DNA of 63,783 nucleotides, filler included, from Octopus bimaculoides (GCF_001194135.2; 7 parts of 5 records of this genome joined end to end with filler, not necessarily neighbours in it), one strand, 5' to 3'. Counted from the first letter of the whole stretch, positions 9,875 through 63,783 are shown. Notes: generated by a model not told the origin, from the letters alone. Numbers and translations are program-made.

Positions 9875-10739
9875 CACTATCTAACTATATCATCATCAAC
9901 ATCATGATATAGTTAGATAATGATGTGTGAGTTTTTACATATGTGTATACATGTGTGTGTGTATCTATCATTGTCATTTAATATCTTTTTCCCATGTTGG
10001 CATGGGTTGGACAGTTTGACAGATTCCAGCAAGACATAGAGCTGCTTTGGTCTCCAATTTTAGCTTTGTCATGGTTTCTACAGCTGGGTACCCTTTCTAA
10101 TGCCAACCACTTAACATTATGTACTGGGTGCTTTTTTCATGCCACTGGCACTAGAGAGATAACATATTTATACATATATATAAATTAATGAATGACAGAG
10201 AAACAGGAGTTGTCTAATCACTTTCATTAGCTTACTGCCATTTCTGCTATAAGAAGCACTGAACACAGAGCCAAGAGCTTATGCAACATCTTATAGCTTC
10301 TACAGAACTAGTTAAATGAAGTGAATGATTGTTGTGGAAAGCATTTAAATACATAAATAACAAGCTTTGCAACTTGATATTTTAAATAAATAGTTAAGAG
10401 CCAGCTGCCATATCTAATGAAATGAACCAAGAATTATTTCTAGTTAATTGAAATTATACTCATAATATGAATAAATATCATTTGCATTAATGACAATTCT
10501 TTTTAAAGGTGGCAAGGGAGAAAACTCTGGAATCTAAGTGAATTAAAAATTAAATGGAAATATATGTAGCATAGAAGTGAGACTGGTGTCTGTTAAATAT
10601 AGTAACAACTCTAAATATGTTTCAACTTAATGTGAACACCTCAGTGTAGCTTGACTCATAACTACCAAATCTAAGAATGATTTTCAGAGGATATACTTTT
10701 TGATAATTACTTGCTGATTAAGTGATATATAATAATGAA

Positions 10740-11230
10740 CTATTGATTTTTAGATAGTTGATGTGGCTCCTGGCTATCAGAAGTAACCATCATTAGGTTT
10801 TCTGGTTGGATTCCTGAGCACAACCAACTGACATTATGGATATTATCCCATCATCTTGTTCTTGATCTACCCCTGTGGAGAGACTCCCTGATCTCTGAGA
10901 TATGCACCCTCTCAAGTAATACCACTGCAGAGACTCTTTACAGGAACCCCATTTTGGTCACTTGTATTCACGCTTATACTCTTTCGGTCCATCACCTAAC
11001 AGTCATGACCTTAGGTGAAGACAGGCACAAAAGCCAAATTGAAGATAGCCAAACTCACTTTGTATAAATAAACAAGTTCTTTCTCTAACATAGAGAATAA
11101 CTATGTTTTGTTCCTTGTATTATTTTCATCTTCCAGTTCTTCCCATTATCATTGATCTCTATTTTCATCACTTCCATGACAGCTTTTCATAGCAAATGCA
11201 CAAACTTCATAATTTCTGATTCAGATCTTT
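10740..11230 (-). mobile_element. Highly degraded RTE (Rex3/Expander-like) RT remnant
   Basis: Minus-strand translation includes FVPVFT*GHDC*VMDRK, resembling the RTE motif FVPTLTYGHELWVMTER; many stops. Confidence 0.5.
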
Positions 11231-13593
11231 ATTTAAAATATAGGGGCCCTGGAAGGAAAGGTCAATGAAGGGTATGTTTATAGTGGAAAGCATTTAAATA
11301 TATGCGTATTTAAATACTTTCTGCTATAAACATACACTTCATTTAAACCACTAAGTCACAGGGATGTAAACAAATCCATACTGGTTGTCAAACGGTGGTG
11401 GGGGACAAAAACACACACATACACACGATGGGTTTCTTTCAGTTTCCCTCTACCAAATCTACTCTCAAGACGTTGGTTGGCCCGAGGTTATAGTAGGAGA
11501 CACTTGCCCAATAAAGTTCATGAGGTCCCTCTGAAACTAGTTGTTGAAATTTCTGAATTTGTTGTTACTAAGATTAATTCATCTGTCACAATCTAAGATA
11601 TATTATCTCATGTAGACATGCATTGCTGTGTAGATACATGTTTTCAGTTGCCATCCCTTTGCAAGGTACATTGTGTCAATCAATGTTTTATGAGTGGAAT
11701 TGGTAGATGGAAACTGTATGGAAGCCCATCATGCATGCTTTTGTGTGTGTGTTTGTGTGAGTGTTTACCTTTTGTGTGTATGTGTGAGTGTTTACCTTTT
11801 CCATGACACTGTTTGAGCAAAACAGTGATGTTAATGTTTACATTCCCTGCAAGCCACACGTCCTGTAGTTCTGCACTTTCAAAGACGAGTGAAATAAAAA
11901 AAGTCCTTTACTTGAAAAACAGGTAAGGGTTTGTTAATAAAAAGGGCATCTGGCTATAAAATACTGCCTCAAAATAAATATTTTGTGGCAGTATGCTTTT
12001 TCTTTTAGTTGCCTTTGATGAAATTCAGGTAACTGGTATACATATTTAAAAAAAACCCAGTAAACCTCACACATCTAACTATAAAAACCTTCACTGAATT
12101 CTTTGTTTACCAAATAGCATGCATACATTCTCTAATCCCTGAATATCATGTTCTGCTCAGACTCAAGATAACTTAATTAATGGCTAGTCATTAAATTTCT
12201 AGAATAACTTCTAGATAATAACTTATATTTACTTAATCTAGCAACGTTTCATTGACAGATTTCCTTATCTTTCTTTGTCTTTGTTGACAGTCCAAATAAC
12301 CAGTACTCTTTAAACCACACACCACCCTCTTTTCACAAACATCGTTTTCCCTTTATGCATTCTCGTCCCCTACTATTCTCGTTCCCTTCCTTTCTCGAAA
12401 GTTCTTCATTAGTTGGATGTTGGCACCACATAGCTGAACCTTCCCTATCAATATTTAGTCAGTGATGTTGTGAAATCCATACTGTACATTATAGATTTCC
12501 AATGGAGATGCTGTAACTTGTACAACGGAAGTATATAATCTAACTAAACAAATATTTTATGCACTCATTTATTATCATCATCATTATTATTATTATTATT
12601 ATTATTATCATTATTATTATTATTACTATCAAGCTGCTACTTGGATCTCAATATTTACCTTTAACTACCAGAGTGAACATTAATGCTAACCTTCTGATAC
12701 AGTATTAGAGGTGGTGGTGTGGTGGTAGCAGTTGTAGTATTGGTGGTGGTGTTAGTAATAGTGGTGGTAGCTGTGGCAATAGTAACAGTAATGGTAGTGG
12801 TGGTGGTGTTAGAAGTGGCTCCCTAACATATTCCAGTCTCTGGCTCAGCACAATACTAATAGAGTATAGTAATTTATCTTAGTTGATCCCATAGTTAGTT
12901 TCTCTGGAGTTTCCATGATGTAAAAGCTCAAGGGTAACAGGCTACTGGATTAGCTAATGTACACACACGCATGCACATACACACGTGCGCACTCGCACAC
13001 ACACACACACAACACAGTCAGCAACAACAATGAAAAACAAGAATGTTGAGAAATCTAGATCATGCATAAATTATCGATGGGTGGCTACAGCTTTCATAAT
13101 CAGTCTCAGTGTGATGAGATTGAGCAGTGATTGTGTGCACGCTGGTATTTTCACAGCAATCAGACAGACAGCTTCCTGCGAGGACGCTGGTATTTGAAAT
13201 TCAATCAGCTGTCAAGTTCCTCTTCATGCTCCTTATATTGCTGATTCCAATTATAGCCAACTACCAACTTCTTTTGCTATTTTGGTTTATTGAATTTTTG
13301 CTATTTTCCCACTTTTTATTAAAATATTTCTTTGAACTAAAAAATTAGATTTTAAAATAATTCCAAAGAATGGGAGAGATGGGGGGGAAACAGAAGCAGA
13401 CAATCTGCTTGCATGAGTGTGTGATGCTTTTAGTTCTCTGCAATCCACTACATTTGGTAATGGGTTATTGTTTAATCCCAAAAGAAACAGAGTAAACCTA
13501 TAACACAAAAAGTGTTCCAACCATGACCATCCCAGAAAATTTTTGGTTCAGTTCCTAGTCAAGATTAAGTATCAGAGATGGGAGAAATCGAAG

Positions 13594-14989: not shown

Positions 14990-15470
14990 GTGGTGTTTGT
15001 GAATTTTGAGAAGCATGGAGGTTTTAAAGGATGCAATGTCTCGGCAACTAAGAACTGATGCAGGTAGTTTGTTCCATGCTTCAGCAACTCTGAGTGTGAA
15101 AAAATGTTTCCGAAAGTCATCAGAGCTGTGTTGTTAGACACATGGAGCTTAAAAAGGTGCTCAAGGTGGTTGTTGGCATGATGGTTAATAATTTTGTGGG
15201 TGTTTACCAAGTTAATTTACAGATGTCAGAGCTTCAATGTATCTATGTCCAGAGTATGGTAGATACCTCATGGAGAGTATTCACTTGGTTACACATTTCT
15301 GAACAGTTTCCAGGAGGTCAATGTCCTGAGCAAGATAGGGGTTCCAGACTGGTGATGCAAATTCCAAGTGTGGCCGCATCATAGCCATATACAACCTTAA
15401 ATAGATAGCTGGAGAGCAGCTGACAAAGGTCTTGCTGAGTGACGTATTGTTTGTTCTTACAGAACATCTA
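14990..15470 (-). mobile_element. CR1-clade LINE RT C-terminal remnant
   Basis: Minus-strand translation MMRPHLEFASPVWNPYLAQDIDLLETVQK...FRKHFFTLRVAEAWNKLPASV carries the characteristic CR1 motifs RPHLE(Y/F) and WNxLP. Confidence 0.9.
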
Positions 15471-15490
15471 TGTTTAAGCAGGAATAAATA

Positions 15491-15532
<42 letters not shown>

Positions 15533-15894
15533 TTAGATTTTTCTTACGAAAGATACAGACCACATAGAAGTGTTCAAGTCAGACCTGAGATGTTAGACAA
15601 GTATAATAAAGGGAATGGAGAAAGTTCAAATCAGGCAAACTACAATGAACAGATATGTACACGGATTTAATTAAGATAAATATAGTCCAAAGAACATATA
15701 TTGATATATTAAAAATACATATAAAAGTATATGAATATTAAAAATATAAATGGACATAAATATATGAATGCACAAACATAGTAGAAATATAATGAAGTAT
15801 AGGACTATAGATAAAAGCGTTTTTTTTTTTCTTAAAAAAGGGTTAGAAATACAATGAAGAGAAAATAATAGGTGTCAAGAAAAGTTTTAGGTTA

Positions 15895-16330
15895 TATTCT
15901 TTTATTTCAATCATTTGACAGCGGCCATGCTGGAGCACCGCTTTTAGTTGAAAAATTTGACCCCAGGACTTATTCTTTGTAAGCCTAGTACTTATCCTAT
16001 CGGTTTCTTTTGCCAAACTGCTAAGTTACGGGGATGTAAACACACTGGCATCGGTTGTCAAGCGATGGTGGAGGGGACAAACACAGACGCACACACACAC
16101 ACACATATACAATGGGTTTCTTTCAGTTTCCGTCTACCAAATTCACTCACAAGGCTTTGGTCGGCCCGAGGTTATAGTAGAAGACACTTGCCCAAGGTGC
16201 CACACNNNNNNNNNNCAAGGCTTTGGTCGGCCCGAGGTTATAGTAGAAGACACTTGCCCAAGGTGCCACACAGTGGGACTGAACCCAGAACCATGTGATT
16301 GGTAAGCAAGCTACTTAGCACACAGCCATA
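15895..16330 (-). mobile_element. SINE family A, minus strand
   Basis: Reverse complement of family A. A second degraded copy is adjacent at about 16330-16625. Confidence 0.8.
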
Positions 16331-17177
16331 TTCTTTTATTCTTTTACTTGTTTCAGTCGCTTAACCGCAGCCATACTGGAGCATTGCCTTGAAGGGTTTT
16401 AGTTGAACAAATCGACCCCAGGATTTATCTTTTTAAGCCTAGTACTTTTTATCAGTCACTCTGCCGAACTGCTAAGTTAACATAACACGTTTCTTTCAGC
16501 TTCAATCTACCAGATCCACTCTCAAGGCTTTATAGTTGGTGGCCAGGGACTATTGTAGAAGACACTTGGTTGAGGTTCCACACAGTAGAACTGAACCTGA
16601 AATCATGTGGATGAGAAGCATGCCTGCACACACACACACATATACACACATACTTTGTGTTTGTGTGTGTATATGTAACCACCGATGGCAGATGTACATA
16701 AAAATTTAAGTTCCGTGTATACAAGTGTAATACATTTTAGCAACTGTAAGTATATGGATGGCAGTAAACATTCTGTTGCATGTGTGTATATGTATGAATG
16801 TTTGTCTACATTTACTGCTGTACATCTTGATATACAACACATACACATATATTTTCTTATATTTGTTTTCCTCTCAAAGCTACTTTCTATCTTTCAGTTA
16901 TTTTTTTGAACCTGACTGTTTTCAATTTCCTCGTTAAAGATATCCTAAGTGATACGACACAGCTAGCTAGCTAACTGAAACAGTATTGCCAATACGAGAT
17001 CAATGTGCACATCAGATGATTTCAAAACAGCTTACACTTATCAGTCAGTGCCTGCTAGAATTTACCAAAGTCAGTATCACAGCCTCAATCTCTTATCACC
17101 CTGCACAACCACCTGCTGTTGCTCCCTGCTACAGTATAATTACAAATTCTTTACAGATAACAAATATTTAAAAAGGG

Positions 17178-17221
<44 letters not shown>

Positions 17222-17690
17222 GATGATAATAATAATAAATAAAAATAATATAGATTATATTTCTAGATGTTATTGATACCAGCTTTTTTGATGGTGTAGT
17301 TGGACTCTTCCAATAGGATTTTGTTAAAATAACCAAAGGGAAATAACTGAAATGGACCAATAGCATGAATTGGAATAACTTACAGAGATATACTGAATGA
17401 TGTATATAAAAAAAAAATTCTTATATAAAATTGCCTTCTTAGTTGGCAAAAGAAAACAAAACTTAGTGGCGATATGGCATTAAACATGGAAGTCCTTAAC
17501 TGAATTCTCATTGTTGTCATGGCTATGTGACACTAGAATTGCATCTTGTCATTGTTATTGTAGCTATGTGACATTAGAACTGTGTTTGTTGTTTTTGTAG
17601 TGTTTTTTACTGTAGCCCTGGGCTGACAAATGACTTGTAAGTGAATTTGGTAGACAAACTGTGTGGAAGCCCATTTTATATATATACATA

Positions 17691-29260: not shown

Positions 29261-30989
29261 CTTGATGATGAGGATCTTATGTAACCTGCCAATACTTGCT
29301 TTCATTGTTTGTCTCTCAGAACAAGAAATGAATGTAAGTTATAATTAAAGGACAGACATGACTGTATGGTTAAGAAGCTTGTTTTGTGACCATGTGATTT
29401 CAAGTTCAGTCTCACTGCATGGTACCTTAGGCAAGTGTTTTCTACTACAGCCCCTCGGGTCAACTAATGCCTTGTTCTGTGGAAGTTCTGTGGAAGTTCT
29501 GTGGAAGTTCTGTGAAAATCTGTTGTGTGTGTGTGTGTGTGTGTTTGCTTGTGAGTGTGTGTATTTTTGTTTGTGTATGTGTGTGTATGTCCCCATAACT
29601 TAGCAGTTCAACAAAAGAGACCAATAGAATAAATACCAATAAATACCAAACTTAAAATATGTACTGATGTACTGAGGCCAATCTAATTTAAGTAAAACCT
29701 TTCAGTGCAGTGCTCCAGCATGGCCACAGTTCAACAACTGAAACAACTAATAAAAGATAAAAATAAAAAAAAACAAATATCTGTAACAGAATCAACTACT
29801 CTGAGCATGTCATGGGGCACCAGTAGCACCAAATTGGACCAAACAGTAATCATACAATCTAATAACTAACAACAGATTTTAATCCTCGTCCTAAATTAAC
29901 AAAGCTACCAGATGAGCAAATGCCATATTAGTGAGGTTCAACTGGTATTTTTTAAGGTGAATTATTTCATTTTTCCCTTCATTGTATTTATTTATTTTAT
30001 TTTTTAGAGGTAATTTGAAATTATTTGGAGTATAAGCTAGGCTCCGAAGATTTTATCGTCATCATTAGTGGGTGTTTAAATGTTTGCTGTCATAGCACTA
30101 AATACTAACAACTCTCAAATGACTAATCATGTAAAACTCACAATCAACTAGTTATGATAAGGGAGAAAAATGATATCAAATAACGAATATAAAAATTTCT
30201 TTTTTTTTTTTCTTTTCTTTTTCTTGATAAATTATTTTTAATATTTTTTTCAAAATTTTTGTTTTGACAAAAAATGAAATGTATTCATTTATTTATTTGC
30301 TTGTTTGTCTATTTACTAATTTTCCACAATATAGACGGATGTTCTTTACTCTGTTTCACATCAAGATTTAAATTGCAACATTATTGTCATTTTTAACAAA
30401 CTAACCAATCTCATTTCATAACTCTTGGTAGCATCATTATCAAACTTTATAGTTTCTTTCTTTCTTTCTTTCTGTCTTTCCTTTTCCTTTCTTTCTTTAC
30501 ATTCTTTCTTCTTGTTTTGACCATTTTTTTTTTCATAATTTTTAATTTACCCTCAACAGTAATTGTTAACATGTTTCTTCTTTTTTCTTCCTACTACTCA
30601 TTCTCTGCCTTTTCTCTCTCTCTCTCTCCCTCTTTCTATCTATCCCCCCTCTCTCTCTCTCTTTCCCTCTCTATATCCTACTGTTTAACTCTATCTACTT
30701 CTCTATCCTAATCTCTGCTGCCTAATTATAATTTCTCACAAAAATTATAACAAAAAGAAAAAAAATGTAATAATTATAAAACTGATTCTAAGAAAACAAA
30801 AAACGAGCAGAAAATTTCTACATTAATGACAACAACAACAACAAAAGGAATGGTAAATTGAAAAACAAAAATATCAGTAAATTTCCAAAGAAGTTAAGTT
30901 TATATAAATGCCCCAGGGCAATCTTTAGTCATTTATTTTTCATATCCATGTCAGTGAATTGGTATTCAGAAAGAAATTGTTTTCAAGAA

Positions 30990-35530: not shown

Positions 35531-36452
35531 TAATAATCGTTTCTATTATAGACACAAAACCTGAATTATGGAGGAAGGGGGACAGTCAATTACATCGATA
35601 CTAGAGCTCAACTGGTACTCATGTTATTGACTCCAAAAGGATGAAAGGCAAAGCTGACCTCAGCAGAATTTGAACTGAGAATGTAAAGATGGACAAAATG
35701 CTATTAGGCCTGAAATTTTAGGGGAGGAGGTAAGTCGAGTACATCGACCCCAGTTCTCAACTGGTACTTGCTTCATCGACCCTGAAATGATGAAAGTCAA
35801 AATCGATCATTTTGTCTGATGGACTAATGATTATACCTGCATATTGCATAAAGCACTGTTTGTTTGAGGTCCTTGTTGTGACTTGACAAACAGTACACCC
35901 CCCCCCCCCNNNNNNNNNNNNNNNNNNNNCCAGTAGACACAATATCTTCAATCAACAACCTCACGGTATTGTATACTGTATGACATCTATAATAATAATA
36001 ATAATAATAATCCTTTCTACTATAGGTGCAAGGCCTGAAATTTGGAGGACGGGGACAGTCGACTGCATCGACCCCAATGCTCAAATGGTACTTATTTTGT
36101 CGACCCCAAAAGGATGAAAGCTAAAGTCAACCCTGGTGGAATTTGAACTCAGAATGTAATGACAGATAAAATACTTCCTAAGCATTTTGTCCAGTGTGTT
36201 AACAATTCTGCCAGCTCACTGTCTTAATAATAATAATAATTCTTTCTACTAAAGGCACAAAACCTGAAATTTTGGGGAAGGGGACTAGTCGATTACATCG
36301 ACCCTAGTGTTTCACTGATACTTAATTTATTGACCCCAAATGGTTGAAAGGCAAAGTTGAAATTGGCAGAATTTGAACTCAGGACATGCAGACATGCAAA
36401 ATGCTGCAAAGCATTTATCCTGGAATTCTAGCAATTCTGCCAGCTCACCACT

Positions 36453-61949: not shown

Positions 61950-62237
61950 NNNNNNNNNNNNNNNNNNNNNNNNNNNNNNNNNNNNNNNNNNNNTTAATTA
62001 ATTAANNNNNNNNNNNNNNNNNNNNNNNNNNNNNNNNNNNNNNNNNNNNTCACAGTTGTACTTATCGTCACCATCATCTTCATCAGAATCCCCATCAGCA
62101 ATACCATCTTCATATTCCTTTCTTCCTCATCCTCCTAATTAATCTCCATATTCCCCTCACTTTTATCACTCAATATTGAAGGTTGTATCACGAAACTATT
62201 CCATTTCATTTCTAATCTTCTCCAATATATTATGCAG

Positions 62238-62309
62238 ATATCTTTCCTCCAATCAAATTCAAGACATCAAAGATGGATCGTTTGCAAATCTCTCCAATTT
62301 GACATATTT
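62238..62309 (+). CDS. Internal coding exon (72 bp, phase 2/2) encoding one 24-aa typical-class leucine-rich repeat
   Basis: Branch-point-like CTAAT (62212-16), pyrimidine-rich run, ttatgcAG acceptor, exactly 72 bp translating xYLSSNQIQDIKDGSFANLSNLTY(L/F), matching LxLxxNxIxxIxxxxFxxLxxL, and a GTAAGT donor. Confidence 0.9.
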
Positions 62310-62689
62310 GTAAGTTGTCTCTGTTTTCTTCAGACTCTTTTACTCAAGATATAATTCTCAATGTTTAATATTAAATCATTTACCGATTTGTCTCATTCTC
62401 ACTCTTTAAACACATAATCCATTCTTCTTTTCTGGTATTCATTATTTTTTGGTTATTTTCTTCTTCACATACTCGTTGTCGTCGTCCTGAAACTCCTCCG
62501 CCGCGCCTTCACCACACGCCCCTATTTTACTCTACTCCCCCATTCTCCTCCTCATCCGCCTCGTCATTTTTATCCAGTCTTCCTCCCGCTTCAGTTCCAT
62601 TCTCGCGTCCTTATTGTTTCACAGTTTGTTGTTGTTGTTGTTCTTCATTATCATCACCATCAACATCAACTTGATTTTTTCTTCTCTTC

Positions 62690-62892
62690 TTTTTCCGTTT
62701 CTTCTTCTTCTTCTTCTTCTTCTTCTTCTTCTTCTCCTTCTTCTTCTTCTTCGTCTTCTTCTTCTTCTTCTTCTTCTTCTTCTTCTTCTTCTTCTTCTTC
62801 TTCTTCTTCTTCTTCTTCTTCTCCTTCTTCTTCTTCTTCGTCTTCTTCTTCTTTTTCTTCTTCGTCTTCTTCTTCTTCTTCTTCTTCTTCTT

Positions 62893-62923
<31 letters not shown>

Positions 62924-63490
62924 TTGTACGTGATCATCTACTTATACTTCTATTCCCTTTCGTCTTCTTTATATTATTTTCTCTTTCATCCTTTTTCATT
63001 CTTTTTCTTCTTCTTGATAATATACTCTTTCTCCTCATATCGCTTCTTCATTTTCTTCCCATCCGTCTTCTTCTTTCTGCATTTCTTCATTTTTCTTCTT
63101 ATTCTGCTTTTTCTTTATCTGCTTCTTTTTTCTCTTTTTTCCTCTTCCCCTTTTTTTTCTTTTTCTAATTCTTCTTCCTCTTCTCTTTCGTCTTAATATT
63201 CTCCTCCTCTTCCTTCTTGGTCTTCTTATTCTTCGCTTTCTTCGTCTTCTTCTTGTTCTTCTTCGCCTTCGTCTTCTTCGTCTTCTTCGTCTGCTTCTTC
63301 GTCTTCTTTTTCTGCTTCTTCTTTTCTCTTTCTTCCTCTTCCTCTTTTATCTCCATTTTGTACTTCTTTTTCTCATCCTTATCCTTTTTCTTCTTATTTT
63401 CCTCCTACTCCATCTTGTACTTCTTCGCTCTCTTCTTCATCTTCATCTTCCTCTTGTTTTTGTACTCCTTCTTCTTCTTCTTCTTCTTCT

Positions 63491-63537
<47 letters not shown>

Positions 63538-63545
63538 TTCTTCTC
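62690..63545. repeat. Intronic (CTT)n and CT-rich polypyrimidine tracts
   Basis: Long (CTT)n runs at about 62695-62921 and 63465-63543. Confidence 0.95.
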
Positions 63546-63783
63546 ATGTTCGTCGTAATGACCATCATCATCATAAACATTGGCATCATCACGATCATCA
63601 TCATGATCCTCCTCCTCCTCTTCCTCCTCCTCATCATCACCATCATCTTCATCAGAATCCCCATCAGCTGTACCATCTTCCTATTCCTTTCTTCCTCATC
63701 CTCCTATTTATTCTCCACATTCATCTCACTTTTATCACTCAATATTGAATATTGTATCACGAAACTATTCCATATTATTTCTA

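What the first reader, a model, noticed from the sequence alone, without database searches (positions are those of the whole stretch)
62049..63783. LRR gene apparently built from tandem single-repeat exon+intron cassettes
Seen: a 72-bp symmetric (phase 2/2) exon with canonical splice signals encodes exactly one typical LRR. The 147 bp running up to its branch point recur 1,569 bp downstream at about 92% identity, and the window ends mid-copy. Prediction: a second LRR exon starts near 63807, 24 bp beyond the window. Established: one-LRR-per-exon 72-bp phase-2 architecture occurs in LRR receptors such as LGR/RXFP-type GPCRs, but intron similarity between units normally decays; here it is retained. 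Inference: this is a recently expanded or concertedly evolving LRR cassette array. Symmetric exons can be skipped, added or swapped without a frameshift, so ectodomain length or isoforms could vary, for example in an immune or sensory receptor. Gene identity cannot be determined from one exon.
Basis: partly seen in the sequence, partly recalled or inferred. Interest (0 to 1): 0.85.

Follow-up and report, generated by a model that had tools for sequence, protein, structure and literature searches.

The report
Single-LRR exon cassette, probably tandemly duplicated
This piece holds one 72-base exon encoding exactly one leucine-rich repeat, and the intron sequence ahead of it starts again 1.57 kb downstream; octopus receptor-like genes are built the same way, so it is a credible example of a known way of growing and varying LRR proteins, not a new mechanism.

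Summary
Exon 62238-62309 is 72 bp, lies between CAG and GTAAGT, and splits its codons 1+69+2 (intron phase 2 on both sides). It encodes one typical 24-residue LRR, (L)YLSSNQIQDIKDGSFANLSNLTY(L). The 154 bp at 62061-62214 recur at 63630-63783 at 91% identity with no indels, far beyond chance, and the second copy is cut by the window end.

The predicted second exon at about 63807 lies outside the data and cannot be checked. The source genome was not found in any collection I could search.

Octopus LRR genes fetched for comparison show the proposed architecture:
- Their LRR exons are 72 bp with the same A+23 codons+TT split and a GTAAGT donor.
- Exon-plus-intron units are tandemly duplicated with periods of 1.7-2.4 kb and 82-95% intron identity.
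- A long (TTC)n tract sits on the coding strand ahead of the exons, as in the piece.
- RefSeq model isoforms differ by exactly 24 or 48 residues.

Single-LRR phase-2 exon arrays are already described in gonadotropin receptors, brown-alga ROCO genes and Tetrahymena.

Verdict: a real feature and a new member of a known kind. The tandem-cassette reading is about 70% likely. Gene identity is unknown, and a cephalopod origin is plausible but unproven. Interest is moderate.

The parts
62050..62082 (+). Start of cassette 1. 62050-62059 and 62062-82 match 62619-62629 and 62648-62668 colinearly, which may mark the unit boundary.
   Evidence: TCACAGTT occurs once in the intron. P=0.015 for the 8-mer and 0.0005 for the 8-mer plus T?GT in 2000 shuffles. 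The second block matches 18/21.
62061..62214 (+). Repeat copy 1: the 3' part of the intron upstream of the LRR exon.
   Evidence: 140/154 identical to copy 2, no indels, 7 transitions and 7 transversions.
62212..62237 (+). Candidate branch point CTAAT (A at 62215), a short pyrimidine-rich stretch, and the acceptor CAG (AG at 62236-62237).
   Evidence: read directly from the sequence. Consensus match only; splicing was not tested.
62238..62309 (+). 72-bp exon split 1+69+2, encoding one 24-residue typical LRR: (L)YLSSNQIQDIKDGSFANLSNLTY(L/F).
62310..62618 (+). Donor GTAAGT (62310-62315) and the non-repetitive 5' part of the downstream intron.
   Evidence: No significant similarity to octopus cassette introns beyond the donor consensus.
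62619..62678 (+). Putative start of cassette 2: a diverged copy of 62050-62082 with a (TTG)n and CATCAA expansion.
62679..63544 (+). Degenerate (TTC)n microsatellite of about 289 units on the coding strand, inside the intron.
   Evidence: The same kind of tract precedes LRR exons in octopus loci L002, L003 and L004.
63563..63654 (+). (CAT)n/(CCT)n triplet-periodic tract that runs into repeat copy 2.
   Evidence: A similar tract lies upstream of the O. bimaculoides exon at L001 10499.
63630..63783 (+). Repeat copy 2, cut by the window end inside the branch-point motif. It predicts an exon at about 63807-63878, outside the data.

Best explanation
The piece is part of an intron-rich animal gene for an extracellular-type LRR protein. 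Each 24-residue repeat is its own 72-bp exon flanked by phase-2 introns, and the split codon (TT|A) supplies a conserved leucine.

The piece covers one full cassette and the beginning of the next. A cassette is the intron 3' part, the exon, and the intron 5' part. The second cassette is inflated by about 0.9 kb of (TTC)n and (CAT)n microsatellite.

Cassettes of this type multiply by tandem duplication, through unequal exchange between units. Every exon keeps the frame, so units can be gained, lost or skipped without a frameshift, and the length and surface of the LRR solenoid can vary.

Shown: the exon, its phase, the repeat, and the microsatellite layout in the piece. The same architecture and tandem duplication are shown in octopus genes.

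Inferred: that an exon follows copy 2, that the exon is spliced, that the source is a cephalopod, and any ligand-binding or isoform function.
For: In the piece:
- The exon, phase and LRR match are confirmed.
- The 154-bp repeat is same-strand, 91% identical, without indels, and sits directly ahead of the acceptor region.
- A colinear second match places a unit start at 62619.

In related loci:
- All 9 LRR exons found by a strict scan of O. bimaculoides L001, O. sinensis L002 and L003, and O. vulgaris L004 are 72 bp, start with A, and end with TT, CT or AT.
- Seven have a GTAAGT donor and two a GTAAG donor. All lie on the gene strand.
- L002 cassettes match at 91.4% over 595 bp and 84% over 813 bp. 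L003 cassettes match at 82.5% over 1540 bp. Periods are 1.7-2.4 kb.
- Every (TTC)n array of 100 bp or more in L002, L003 and L004 lies on the coding strand within the LRR-exon zone, as in the piece.
- O. sinensis model isoforms are identical except for gaps of 24 and 48 residues in the LRR array. Three 257-aa isoforms of another gene differ in unit content.
- GC is about 36% in all loci, against about 35% in the piece.

Precedent: 72-bp LRR exon arrays in brown-alga ROCO genes and phase-2 introns in gonadotropin receptors (PMC11378527); 90-bp phase-2 LRR exon arrays in Tetrahymena (PMC6564038).
Against: - Only one exon is visible. The second unit is represented by 154 bp of intron only.
- Copy 1 starts 11 bp from the piece edge and copy 2 ends at the window edge, so neither boundary of the repeat is defined.
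- There is no nucleotide-level similarity between the piece's introns and the octopus cassettes beyond the donor consensus.
- The best single-LRR identity to any retrieved protein is 17/25. Membership in the octopus family and the taxon are therefore not established.
- In L004, adjacent cassettes are not similar outside the microsatellite, so adjacency of an LRR exon does not guarantee a recently duplicated neighbour.
- The isoforms are computational RefSeq models.
- There are no expression data for the piece.
Confidence: 0.7

Rival explanations
1. The 154-bp block is part of a dispersed repeat (SINE, MITE or other transposable-element fragment). It happens to lie upstream of a lone LRR exon and again inside the next intron. 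No second exon follows, and there is no cassette array here.
For: Both ends of the repeat are undefined because of the piece and window edges. Cephalopod-like genomes are repeat-rich (my own knowledge). Only intron sequence is duplicated within the visible data.
Against: - No inverted repeats, tRNA-like part or Rfam match were found.
- There is no copy in about 127 kb of octopus loci and none in the viral, metagenome or prokaryote collections. This is weak evidence, because the source genome is not among them.
- The repeat has the same orientation and sits exactly at the acceptor-proximal intron. It lies after a (TTC)n tract, as in true octopus cassettes.
- The extra colinear match at 62619 fits a unit boundary.
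Confidence: 0.15
2. Assembly artefact. The two copies are the same locus, or two haplotypes of it, stitched in tandem across a long, hard-to-assemble (TTC)n microsatellite. The real gene has one unit here.
For: About 870 bp of degenerate microsatellite separates the copies. The O. sinensis contigs L002 and L003 both end inside such arrays, and L003 carries homopolymer-type errors in its second exon. These regions clearly assemble badly.
Against: - 9% divergence spread evenly over the block, half of it transversions, is high for alleles or read errors.
- There are no indels in 154 bp, which argues against raw long-read error.
- Genuine tandem units at similar divergence exist in the O. sinensis contigs L002 and L003.
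Confidence: 0.07
3. The cassette array is real but decaying. The exon is a relic or unused pseudo-exon in a non-functional or partly degenerate LRR array, and is not spliced into any mRNA.
For: There is no transcript evidence. The exon's protein is not in a collection of 5.8 billion protein clusters, so no annotation uses it. The second exon in L003 has a stop and frameshifts. The polypyrimidine tract next to the acceptor is weak.
Against: The reading frame is intact, every LRR consensus position is kept, and the GTAAGT donor and CAG acceptor are perfect. Absence from annotation may only mean the source genome is unannotated or absent from the collection.
Confidence: 0.08

Closest known systems
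Octopus LRRNT-LRR genes, e.g. O. sinensis 'LRRC15-like/slit homolog-like' XP_036369232 with its isoforms and XP_036369864, plus the partial genes on VCDQ01005800.1, VCDQ01006897.1, O. vulgaris OX597843.1 and O. bimaculoides LOC106880013
   Same: - 72-bp single-LRR exons with the A+23 codons+TT split and a GTAAGT donor.
- Tandem exon+intron cassettes with 82-95% intron identity and periods of 0.8-2.4 kb.
- A (TTC)n tract on the coding strand ahead of the exons.
- GC of about 36%.
- Model isoforms that differ by whole 24-residue units.
   Different: There is no detectable intron homology, and LRR identity is only about 45-60%. This is a different gene and possibly a different species. The N- and C-terminal parts (LRRNT, and a Cys-rich region that looks Ly6/uPAR-like by eye) cannot be checked in the piece.
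Glycoprotein-hormone receptor / LGR / RXFP genes of animals
   Same: Ectodomain LRRs are encoded by separate exons of similar size, with all introns in phase 2 (cited in PMC11378527). An LGR-like echinoderm protein with LRR + 7tm_1 is among the best LRR matches.
   Different: In those genes the units are ancient and the introns are unrelated. Here the intron sequence is 91% retained. No 7TM part is visible, so membership is untestable.
Brown-alga LRR-ROCO genes (Ectocarpus, Saccharina)
   Same: Arrays of 72-bp single-LRR exons in one phase. They are interpreted as exon shuffling, with alternative splicing that gives different LRR content (PMC11378527).
   Different: The codon split differs: coding nucleotides 3-71 there, against 2-70 here. 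The lineage differs, and I recall a much higher genome GC there. Those are intracellular ROC-COR proteins, whereas this repeat is the extracellular 'typical' type.
Tetrahymena LRR genes with 90-bp exon arrays
   Same: [quoted passage not shown] They were expanded by unequal crossing-over, and younger genes keep similar introns (PMC6564038).
   Different: The units are 90 bp, the organism is a ciliate, and the LRR class is different.
Human LRR families with strict exonic modularity (e.g. NLRP3)
   Same: One structural LRR unit per exon is described as a precondition for alternative splicing of LRR domains (PMC6642158 abstract).
   Different: The NLR repeats are of the RI type, the exons are larger, and there is no recent tandem duplication with intron identity.

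Membership tests
Typical 24-residue extracellular LRR (Pfam LRR_8 / LRR clan) | LxxLxLxxNxL core followed by xxLxxxxFxxLxxL, with a unit length of 24 | tested here: met
   LRR_8 E=1e-5. Aligns end to end with LRRTM, VLR and LRRC15 repeats.
Typical 24-residue extracellular LRR (Pfam LRR_8 / LRR clan) | Several consecutive repeats, plus LRRNT/LRRCT caps and a signal peptide | not testable with these tools
   Only one exon lies in the piece, and the source genome was not found.
Single-LRR symmetric-exon array (LGR, ROCO or Tetrahymena type) | Exon length equals one repeat, with the same intron phase on both sides | tested here: met
   72 bp, split 1+69+2, phase 2/2, and TT|A = Leu.
Single-LRR symmetric-exon array (LGR, ROCO or Tetrahymena type) | At least two consecutive such exons | tested here: inconclusive
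   Copy 2 of the upstream intron is present, but the predicted exon at 63807 lies outside the window.
Single-LRR symmetric-exon array (LGR, ROCO or Tetrahymena type) | The exons are actually spliced or skipped in mRNA | not testable with these tools
   No transcript data. Only the consensus splice signals are seen.
Octopus LRRNT-LRR cassette genes | Exon design of A+23 codons+TT with a GTAAGT donor, and a (TTC)n tract on the coding strand in the intron ahead of the exons | tested here: met
Octopus LRRNT-LRR cassette genes | Sequence homology to family members in protein or intron | tested here: not met
   Best match to an octopus repeat is 15/25 residues, and 17/25 to any protein. Intron alignments are not above shuffles, except for one downstream flank that shares the GTAAGTT donor.
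LGR/RXFP-type GPCR | Rhodopsin-type 7TM domain downstream of the LRR ectodomain | not testable with these tools
   Outside the piece. The best LRR matches include both GPCR and non-GPCR proteins.
Transposable element or dispersed repeat (for the 154-bp block) | Terminal repeats, a tRNA or 7SL-like head, a poly-A tail, and many dispersed copies | tested here: inconclusive
   No inverted repeats, tRNA or Rfam hit, and no other copies in anything searchable. However, the ends of the block and the source genome are unavailable.

The most novel reading that the evidence does not exclude
Cephalopod LRR receptor genes, including the one this piece comes from, may use arrays of recently duplicated single-LRR exon cassettes as a diversity generator. 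In this reading each cassette is preceded by a long (UUC)n tract. The tract would act as a PTB-type splicing silencer that sets the probability of skipping each unit. At the DNA level it would act as a triplex-prone GAA.TTC sequence that promotes unequal exchange. The result would be combinatorial or individual-specific ectodomains, functionally comparable to Dscam or the brown-alga ROCO proposal.
Probability: 0.1. Interest if true: 0.8.

Novelty: new member of a known kind. Interest (0 to 1): 0.4.

Why it matters
If the array is real, the gene is a recent, still-evolving example of how LRR ectodomains grow one repeat at a time. It also keeps the frame, so units can be skipped.

The comparison loci suggest this is a general and apparently undescribed feature of octopus LRR genes. 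I found no paper on it in the library searches. Three observations there could be followed up with existing cephalopod long-read genomes and Iso-Seq data:
- the (TTC)n tracts tied to the cassettes;
- exons that are more diverged than their introns in one pair (87.5% against 91-95%);
- model isoforms that differ by whole units.

For the piece alone, the gain is modest: a well-formed LRR exon and a probable tandem unit.

Tried and rejected
- Finding the source or an orthologue failed.
  - A synthetic two-unit query found only a bacterial 59-aa LRR protein.
  - Ten ORFs of the piece are not in the protein collection.
  - 22- and 23-mers of the repeat, and a degenerate pattern for NQIQDIKDGSFAN, gave no hits in the viral, JGI metagenome or GTDB genome collections.
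- The full HMMER search ranked two bacterial effector-like LRR proteins first. These were rejected as relatives because their high scores come from summing many repeats.
- A search with the whole of P0007 timed out. P0007 and P0169 are not on record as longest isoforms. The P0005 gene spans 229 kb, so no DNA was returned.
- Minus-strand ORFs (poly-K/E/R, and acidic D/E runs) were rejected as genes. They are the automatic result of GAA/ATG/GAG triplet repeats.
- A brown-alga origin was rejected. The codon split differs, and I recall a much higher genome GC there.
- Apparent similarity of the acceptor-proximal intron to L002 (GTATCAC.AAA.TATT) is not above shuffles.
- Rfam and tRNA scans found nothing.

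Full report
**What is in the piece**

The usable sequence is 62050-63783, which is 1,734 bp. It is about 35% G+C and strongly pyrimidine-rich on the + strand.

At 62236-62237 there is a CAG acceptor. A GTAAGT donor lies at 62310-62315, and the 72 bp between them are open in one frame only as an LRR. That frame is one base, then 23 codons (YLSSNQIQDIKDGSFANLSNLTY), then two bases, TT. Both flanking introns are therefore phase 2.

If such an exon is joined to another of the same design, TT+A gives TTA = Leu. This falls exactly on the conserved leucine of LxxLxLxxN.

The peptide matches Pfam LRR_8 at E=1e-5 and 25.6 bits. It aligns end to end with repeats of LRRTM, VLR/repebody, LRRC15, LGR4 and chondroadherin structures, so it is the 'typical' extracellular 24-residue class.

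A CTAAT motif at 62212-62216 lies 22 nt before the AG and is a plausible branch point. A strict scan for 72-bp AG...GT LRR-like intervals finds only this one, on either strand.

**The repeat**

The segment 62061-62214 matches 63630-63783 at 140/154 positions (91%) without indels, at an offset of 1569. The diagonal score is 112, against at most 18 in 30 dinucleotide shuffles. The 14 differences are 7 transitions and 7 transversions spread over the block.

Copy 2 ends with the window, inside the branch-point motif, and similarity is still high at the last base. Copy 1 begins 11 bp from the piece edge. Neither end of the repeat is therefore defined.

Between the copies lie three parts:
- about 310 bp of ordinary intron;
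- an 866-bp degenerate (TTC)n tract at 62679-63544;
- a (CAT)n/(CCT)n tract at 63563-63654.

One further detail concerns the first 33 bp of the piece. TCACAGTT-GT and TTATCGTCACCATCATCTTCA match 62619-62629 and 62648-62668 colinearly. The 8-mer plus T?GT occurs in 0.05% of shuffles. This fits a basic unit of about 569 bp (62050-62618), with a second unit starting at 62619 that has been inflated by microsatellite growth. The evidence is suggestive, not conclusive.

**Search for the source**

All routes failed:
- No protein with this repeat is in the 5.8-billion-cluster collection.
- None of the piece's ORFs is on record.
- Exact or degenerate DNA patterns hit nothing in the viral, metagenome or prokaryote collections.

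The second exon predicted at 63807 therefore cannot be checked with these tools.

**Relatives by protein**

A full HMMER search with the exon, embedded in its 45-aa ORF, gave 310 hits. After two bacterial many-repeat proteins, the best animal hits are:
- an Amphiura filiformis LRR + 7tm_1 (LGR-like) protein;
- Octopus sinensis 'LRRC15-like/slit-like' proteins;
- Branchiostoma LRR-TM proteins.

The best single-repeat identity to any retrieved protein is 17/25.

**The informative comparison: octopus loci**

I fetched four loci:
- O. bimaculoides L001;
- O. sinensis L002 and L003;
- O. vulgaris L004.

All are about 36% G+C.

The strict scan finds nine LRR exons in them. All lie on the gene strand, all are 72 bp, all start with A and all end with TT, CT or AT (so the junction codon is Leu or Ile). 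Seven have a GTAAGT donor and two have GTAAG. This is the same design as the piece.

Self-comparison shows tandem exon+intron cassettes:
- In L002, 13479-14071 matches 15595-16181 at 91.4%, and 14085-14834 matches 16481-17290 at 84%.
- In L003, 13562-15067 matches 15279-16775 at 82.5%.

Both arrays run to the contig end, which shows that such arrays break assemblies.

In the L002 pair, the exon is less conserved (63/72, 87.5%) than 230 bp of upstream intron (90.6%) and 290 bp of downstream intron (95.5%). This is a single pair, but it is the pattern expected if the repeat surface is diversifying.

In L002, L003 and L004, every (TTC)n array of at least 100 bp lies on the coding strand within the LRR-exon zone. 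Most sit just ahead of an exon, and none lies elsewhere in these 77 kb. The piece has the same layout. L001 has a triplet-periodic CAT/CTT/CCT tract ahead of its exon.

RefSeq model isoforms of one O. sinensis gene are identical except for gaps of exactly 24 and 48 residues in the LRR array. Another gene has three 257-aa isoforms with different unit content.

There is, however, no nucleotide homology between the piece's introns and these cassettes beyond the donor consensus. The piece shares the architecture but is not shown to be a family member, or even cephalopod.

**Interpretation**

The piece is one cassette and the start of the next in a tandem array of single-LRR exon+intron units. The array would have been produced by unequal exchange, and units could be added, lost or skipped in frame.

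The rivals are:
- a dispersed repeat next to a lone exon (0.15);
- an assembly or haplotype artefact across the microsatellite (0.07);
- a real but decaying, unspliced array (0.08).

Each would be settled by extending the sequence, counting copies of the block, and looking at long reads and transcripts.

**Comparison with what is known**

Single-repeat, same-phase LRR exon arrays are well described:
- gonadotropin receptor and LGR genes, with phase-2 introns, and brown-alga ROCO genes, with 72-bp exons, exon shuffling and alternative splicing (PMC11378527);
- Tetrahymena, with about 50,000 exons of 90 bp, more than 96% separated by phase-2 introns, a junction codon and unequal crossing-over (PMC6564038);
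- human LRR families with strict exonic modularity (PMC6642158).

The brown-alga exons have a different codon split (coding nucleotides 3-71), so the likeness to them is one of design only.

I found no paper describing such arrays in cephalopods. Octopus-specific adhesion GPCRs with LRRs are reported, though (PMC6408891). A gene with LRR, GPS and 7tm_2 domains overlaps the P0005 locus on the other strand.

**Verdict**

The feature is a new member of a known kind, of moderate interest (0.4).

The most novel reading not excluded is that the cassette-linked (UUC)n tracts take part in regulated exon skipping or in array instability, giving receptor diversity. I put this at about 0.1.

Noticed in passing
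L002 13481-17251; L003 13485-15446; L004 14064-18088; window 62679-63544: Long degenerate (TTC)n tracts on the coding strand are confined to the LRR-exon zones of three octopus loci, usually just upstream of a 72-bp LRR exon. The piece has the same layout. The tract looks like a component of the cassette. It may be an expanded polypyrimidine tract, a PTB-type site, or triplex-prone GAA.TTC DNA.
   Followed up: partly
L002 13712-13783 vs 15822-15893 and their flanks: In this tandem cassette pair the exon is 87.5% identical, while the flanking introns are 90.6% (upstream) and 95.5% (downstream). All four amino-acid changes are at variable x positions. This may reflect diversifying selection, but it is only one pair.
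   Followed up: partly
O. sinensis proteins P0007/P0152/P0153 and P0169/P0170/P0171: RefSeq model isoforms differ by exactly 24 or 48 residues, or have equal length with different LRR unit content. One (P0171) looks like a chimera of two adjacent units, which simple exon skipping does not explain.
   Followed up: partly
L002 and L003 ends (contigs VCDQ01005800.1 and VCDQ01006897.1); L003 about 15913-15980: Both O. sinensis contigs end inside the cassette array. The second L003 exon carries homopolymer-type deletions and a stop. The cause is either assembly error or a pseudo-exon.
   Followed up: no
L001 2-1073 vs 10359-11233; 30073-30669 vs 35708-36395: In O. bimaculoides, a block of about 1.1 kb (LRR exon plus flanks) and a Cys-rich-domain exon block are each duplicated, at about 10 kb and about 5.7 kb spacing, with roughly 75% identity. 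The 30 nt before the two LRR exons are identical. These look like tandem gene or segment duplicates within the family.
   Followed up: partly
Octopus proteins P0007, P0158, P0167; P0005 locus: After the LRRs, the octopus family carries a Cys-rich region that looks Ly6/uPAR-like by eye. One relative is named 'ly6/PLAUR domain-containing'. P0167 has a weak HRM hit. A gene with LRR, GPS and 7tm_2 domains overlaps the P0005 locus on the other strand. This suggests a possible link to the octopus-specific adhesion-GPCR expansion.
   Followed up: no
window 62611-63676, minus strand: Long minus-strand ORFs (poly-K/E/R, and acidic D/E/G runs such as EDGTADGDSDEDDGDDEEEEEEEE) follow automatically from the GAA, GAG and ATG triplet repeats. 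A similar acidic-looking antisense reading exists upstream of the L001 exon at 10499. These were not treated as genes.
   Followed up: partly
window 62176-62237: The intron just upstream of the exon is open in the exon's frame (…SISFLIFSNILCR|YLSS…). HMMER extended some alignments into it. This is probably a coincidence of the reading frame and not extra coding sequence.
   Followed up: no
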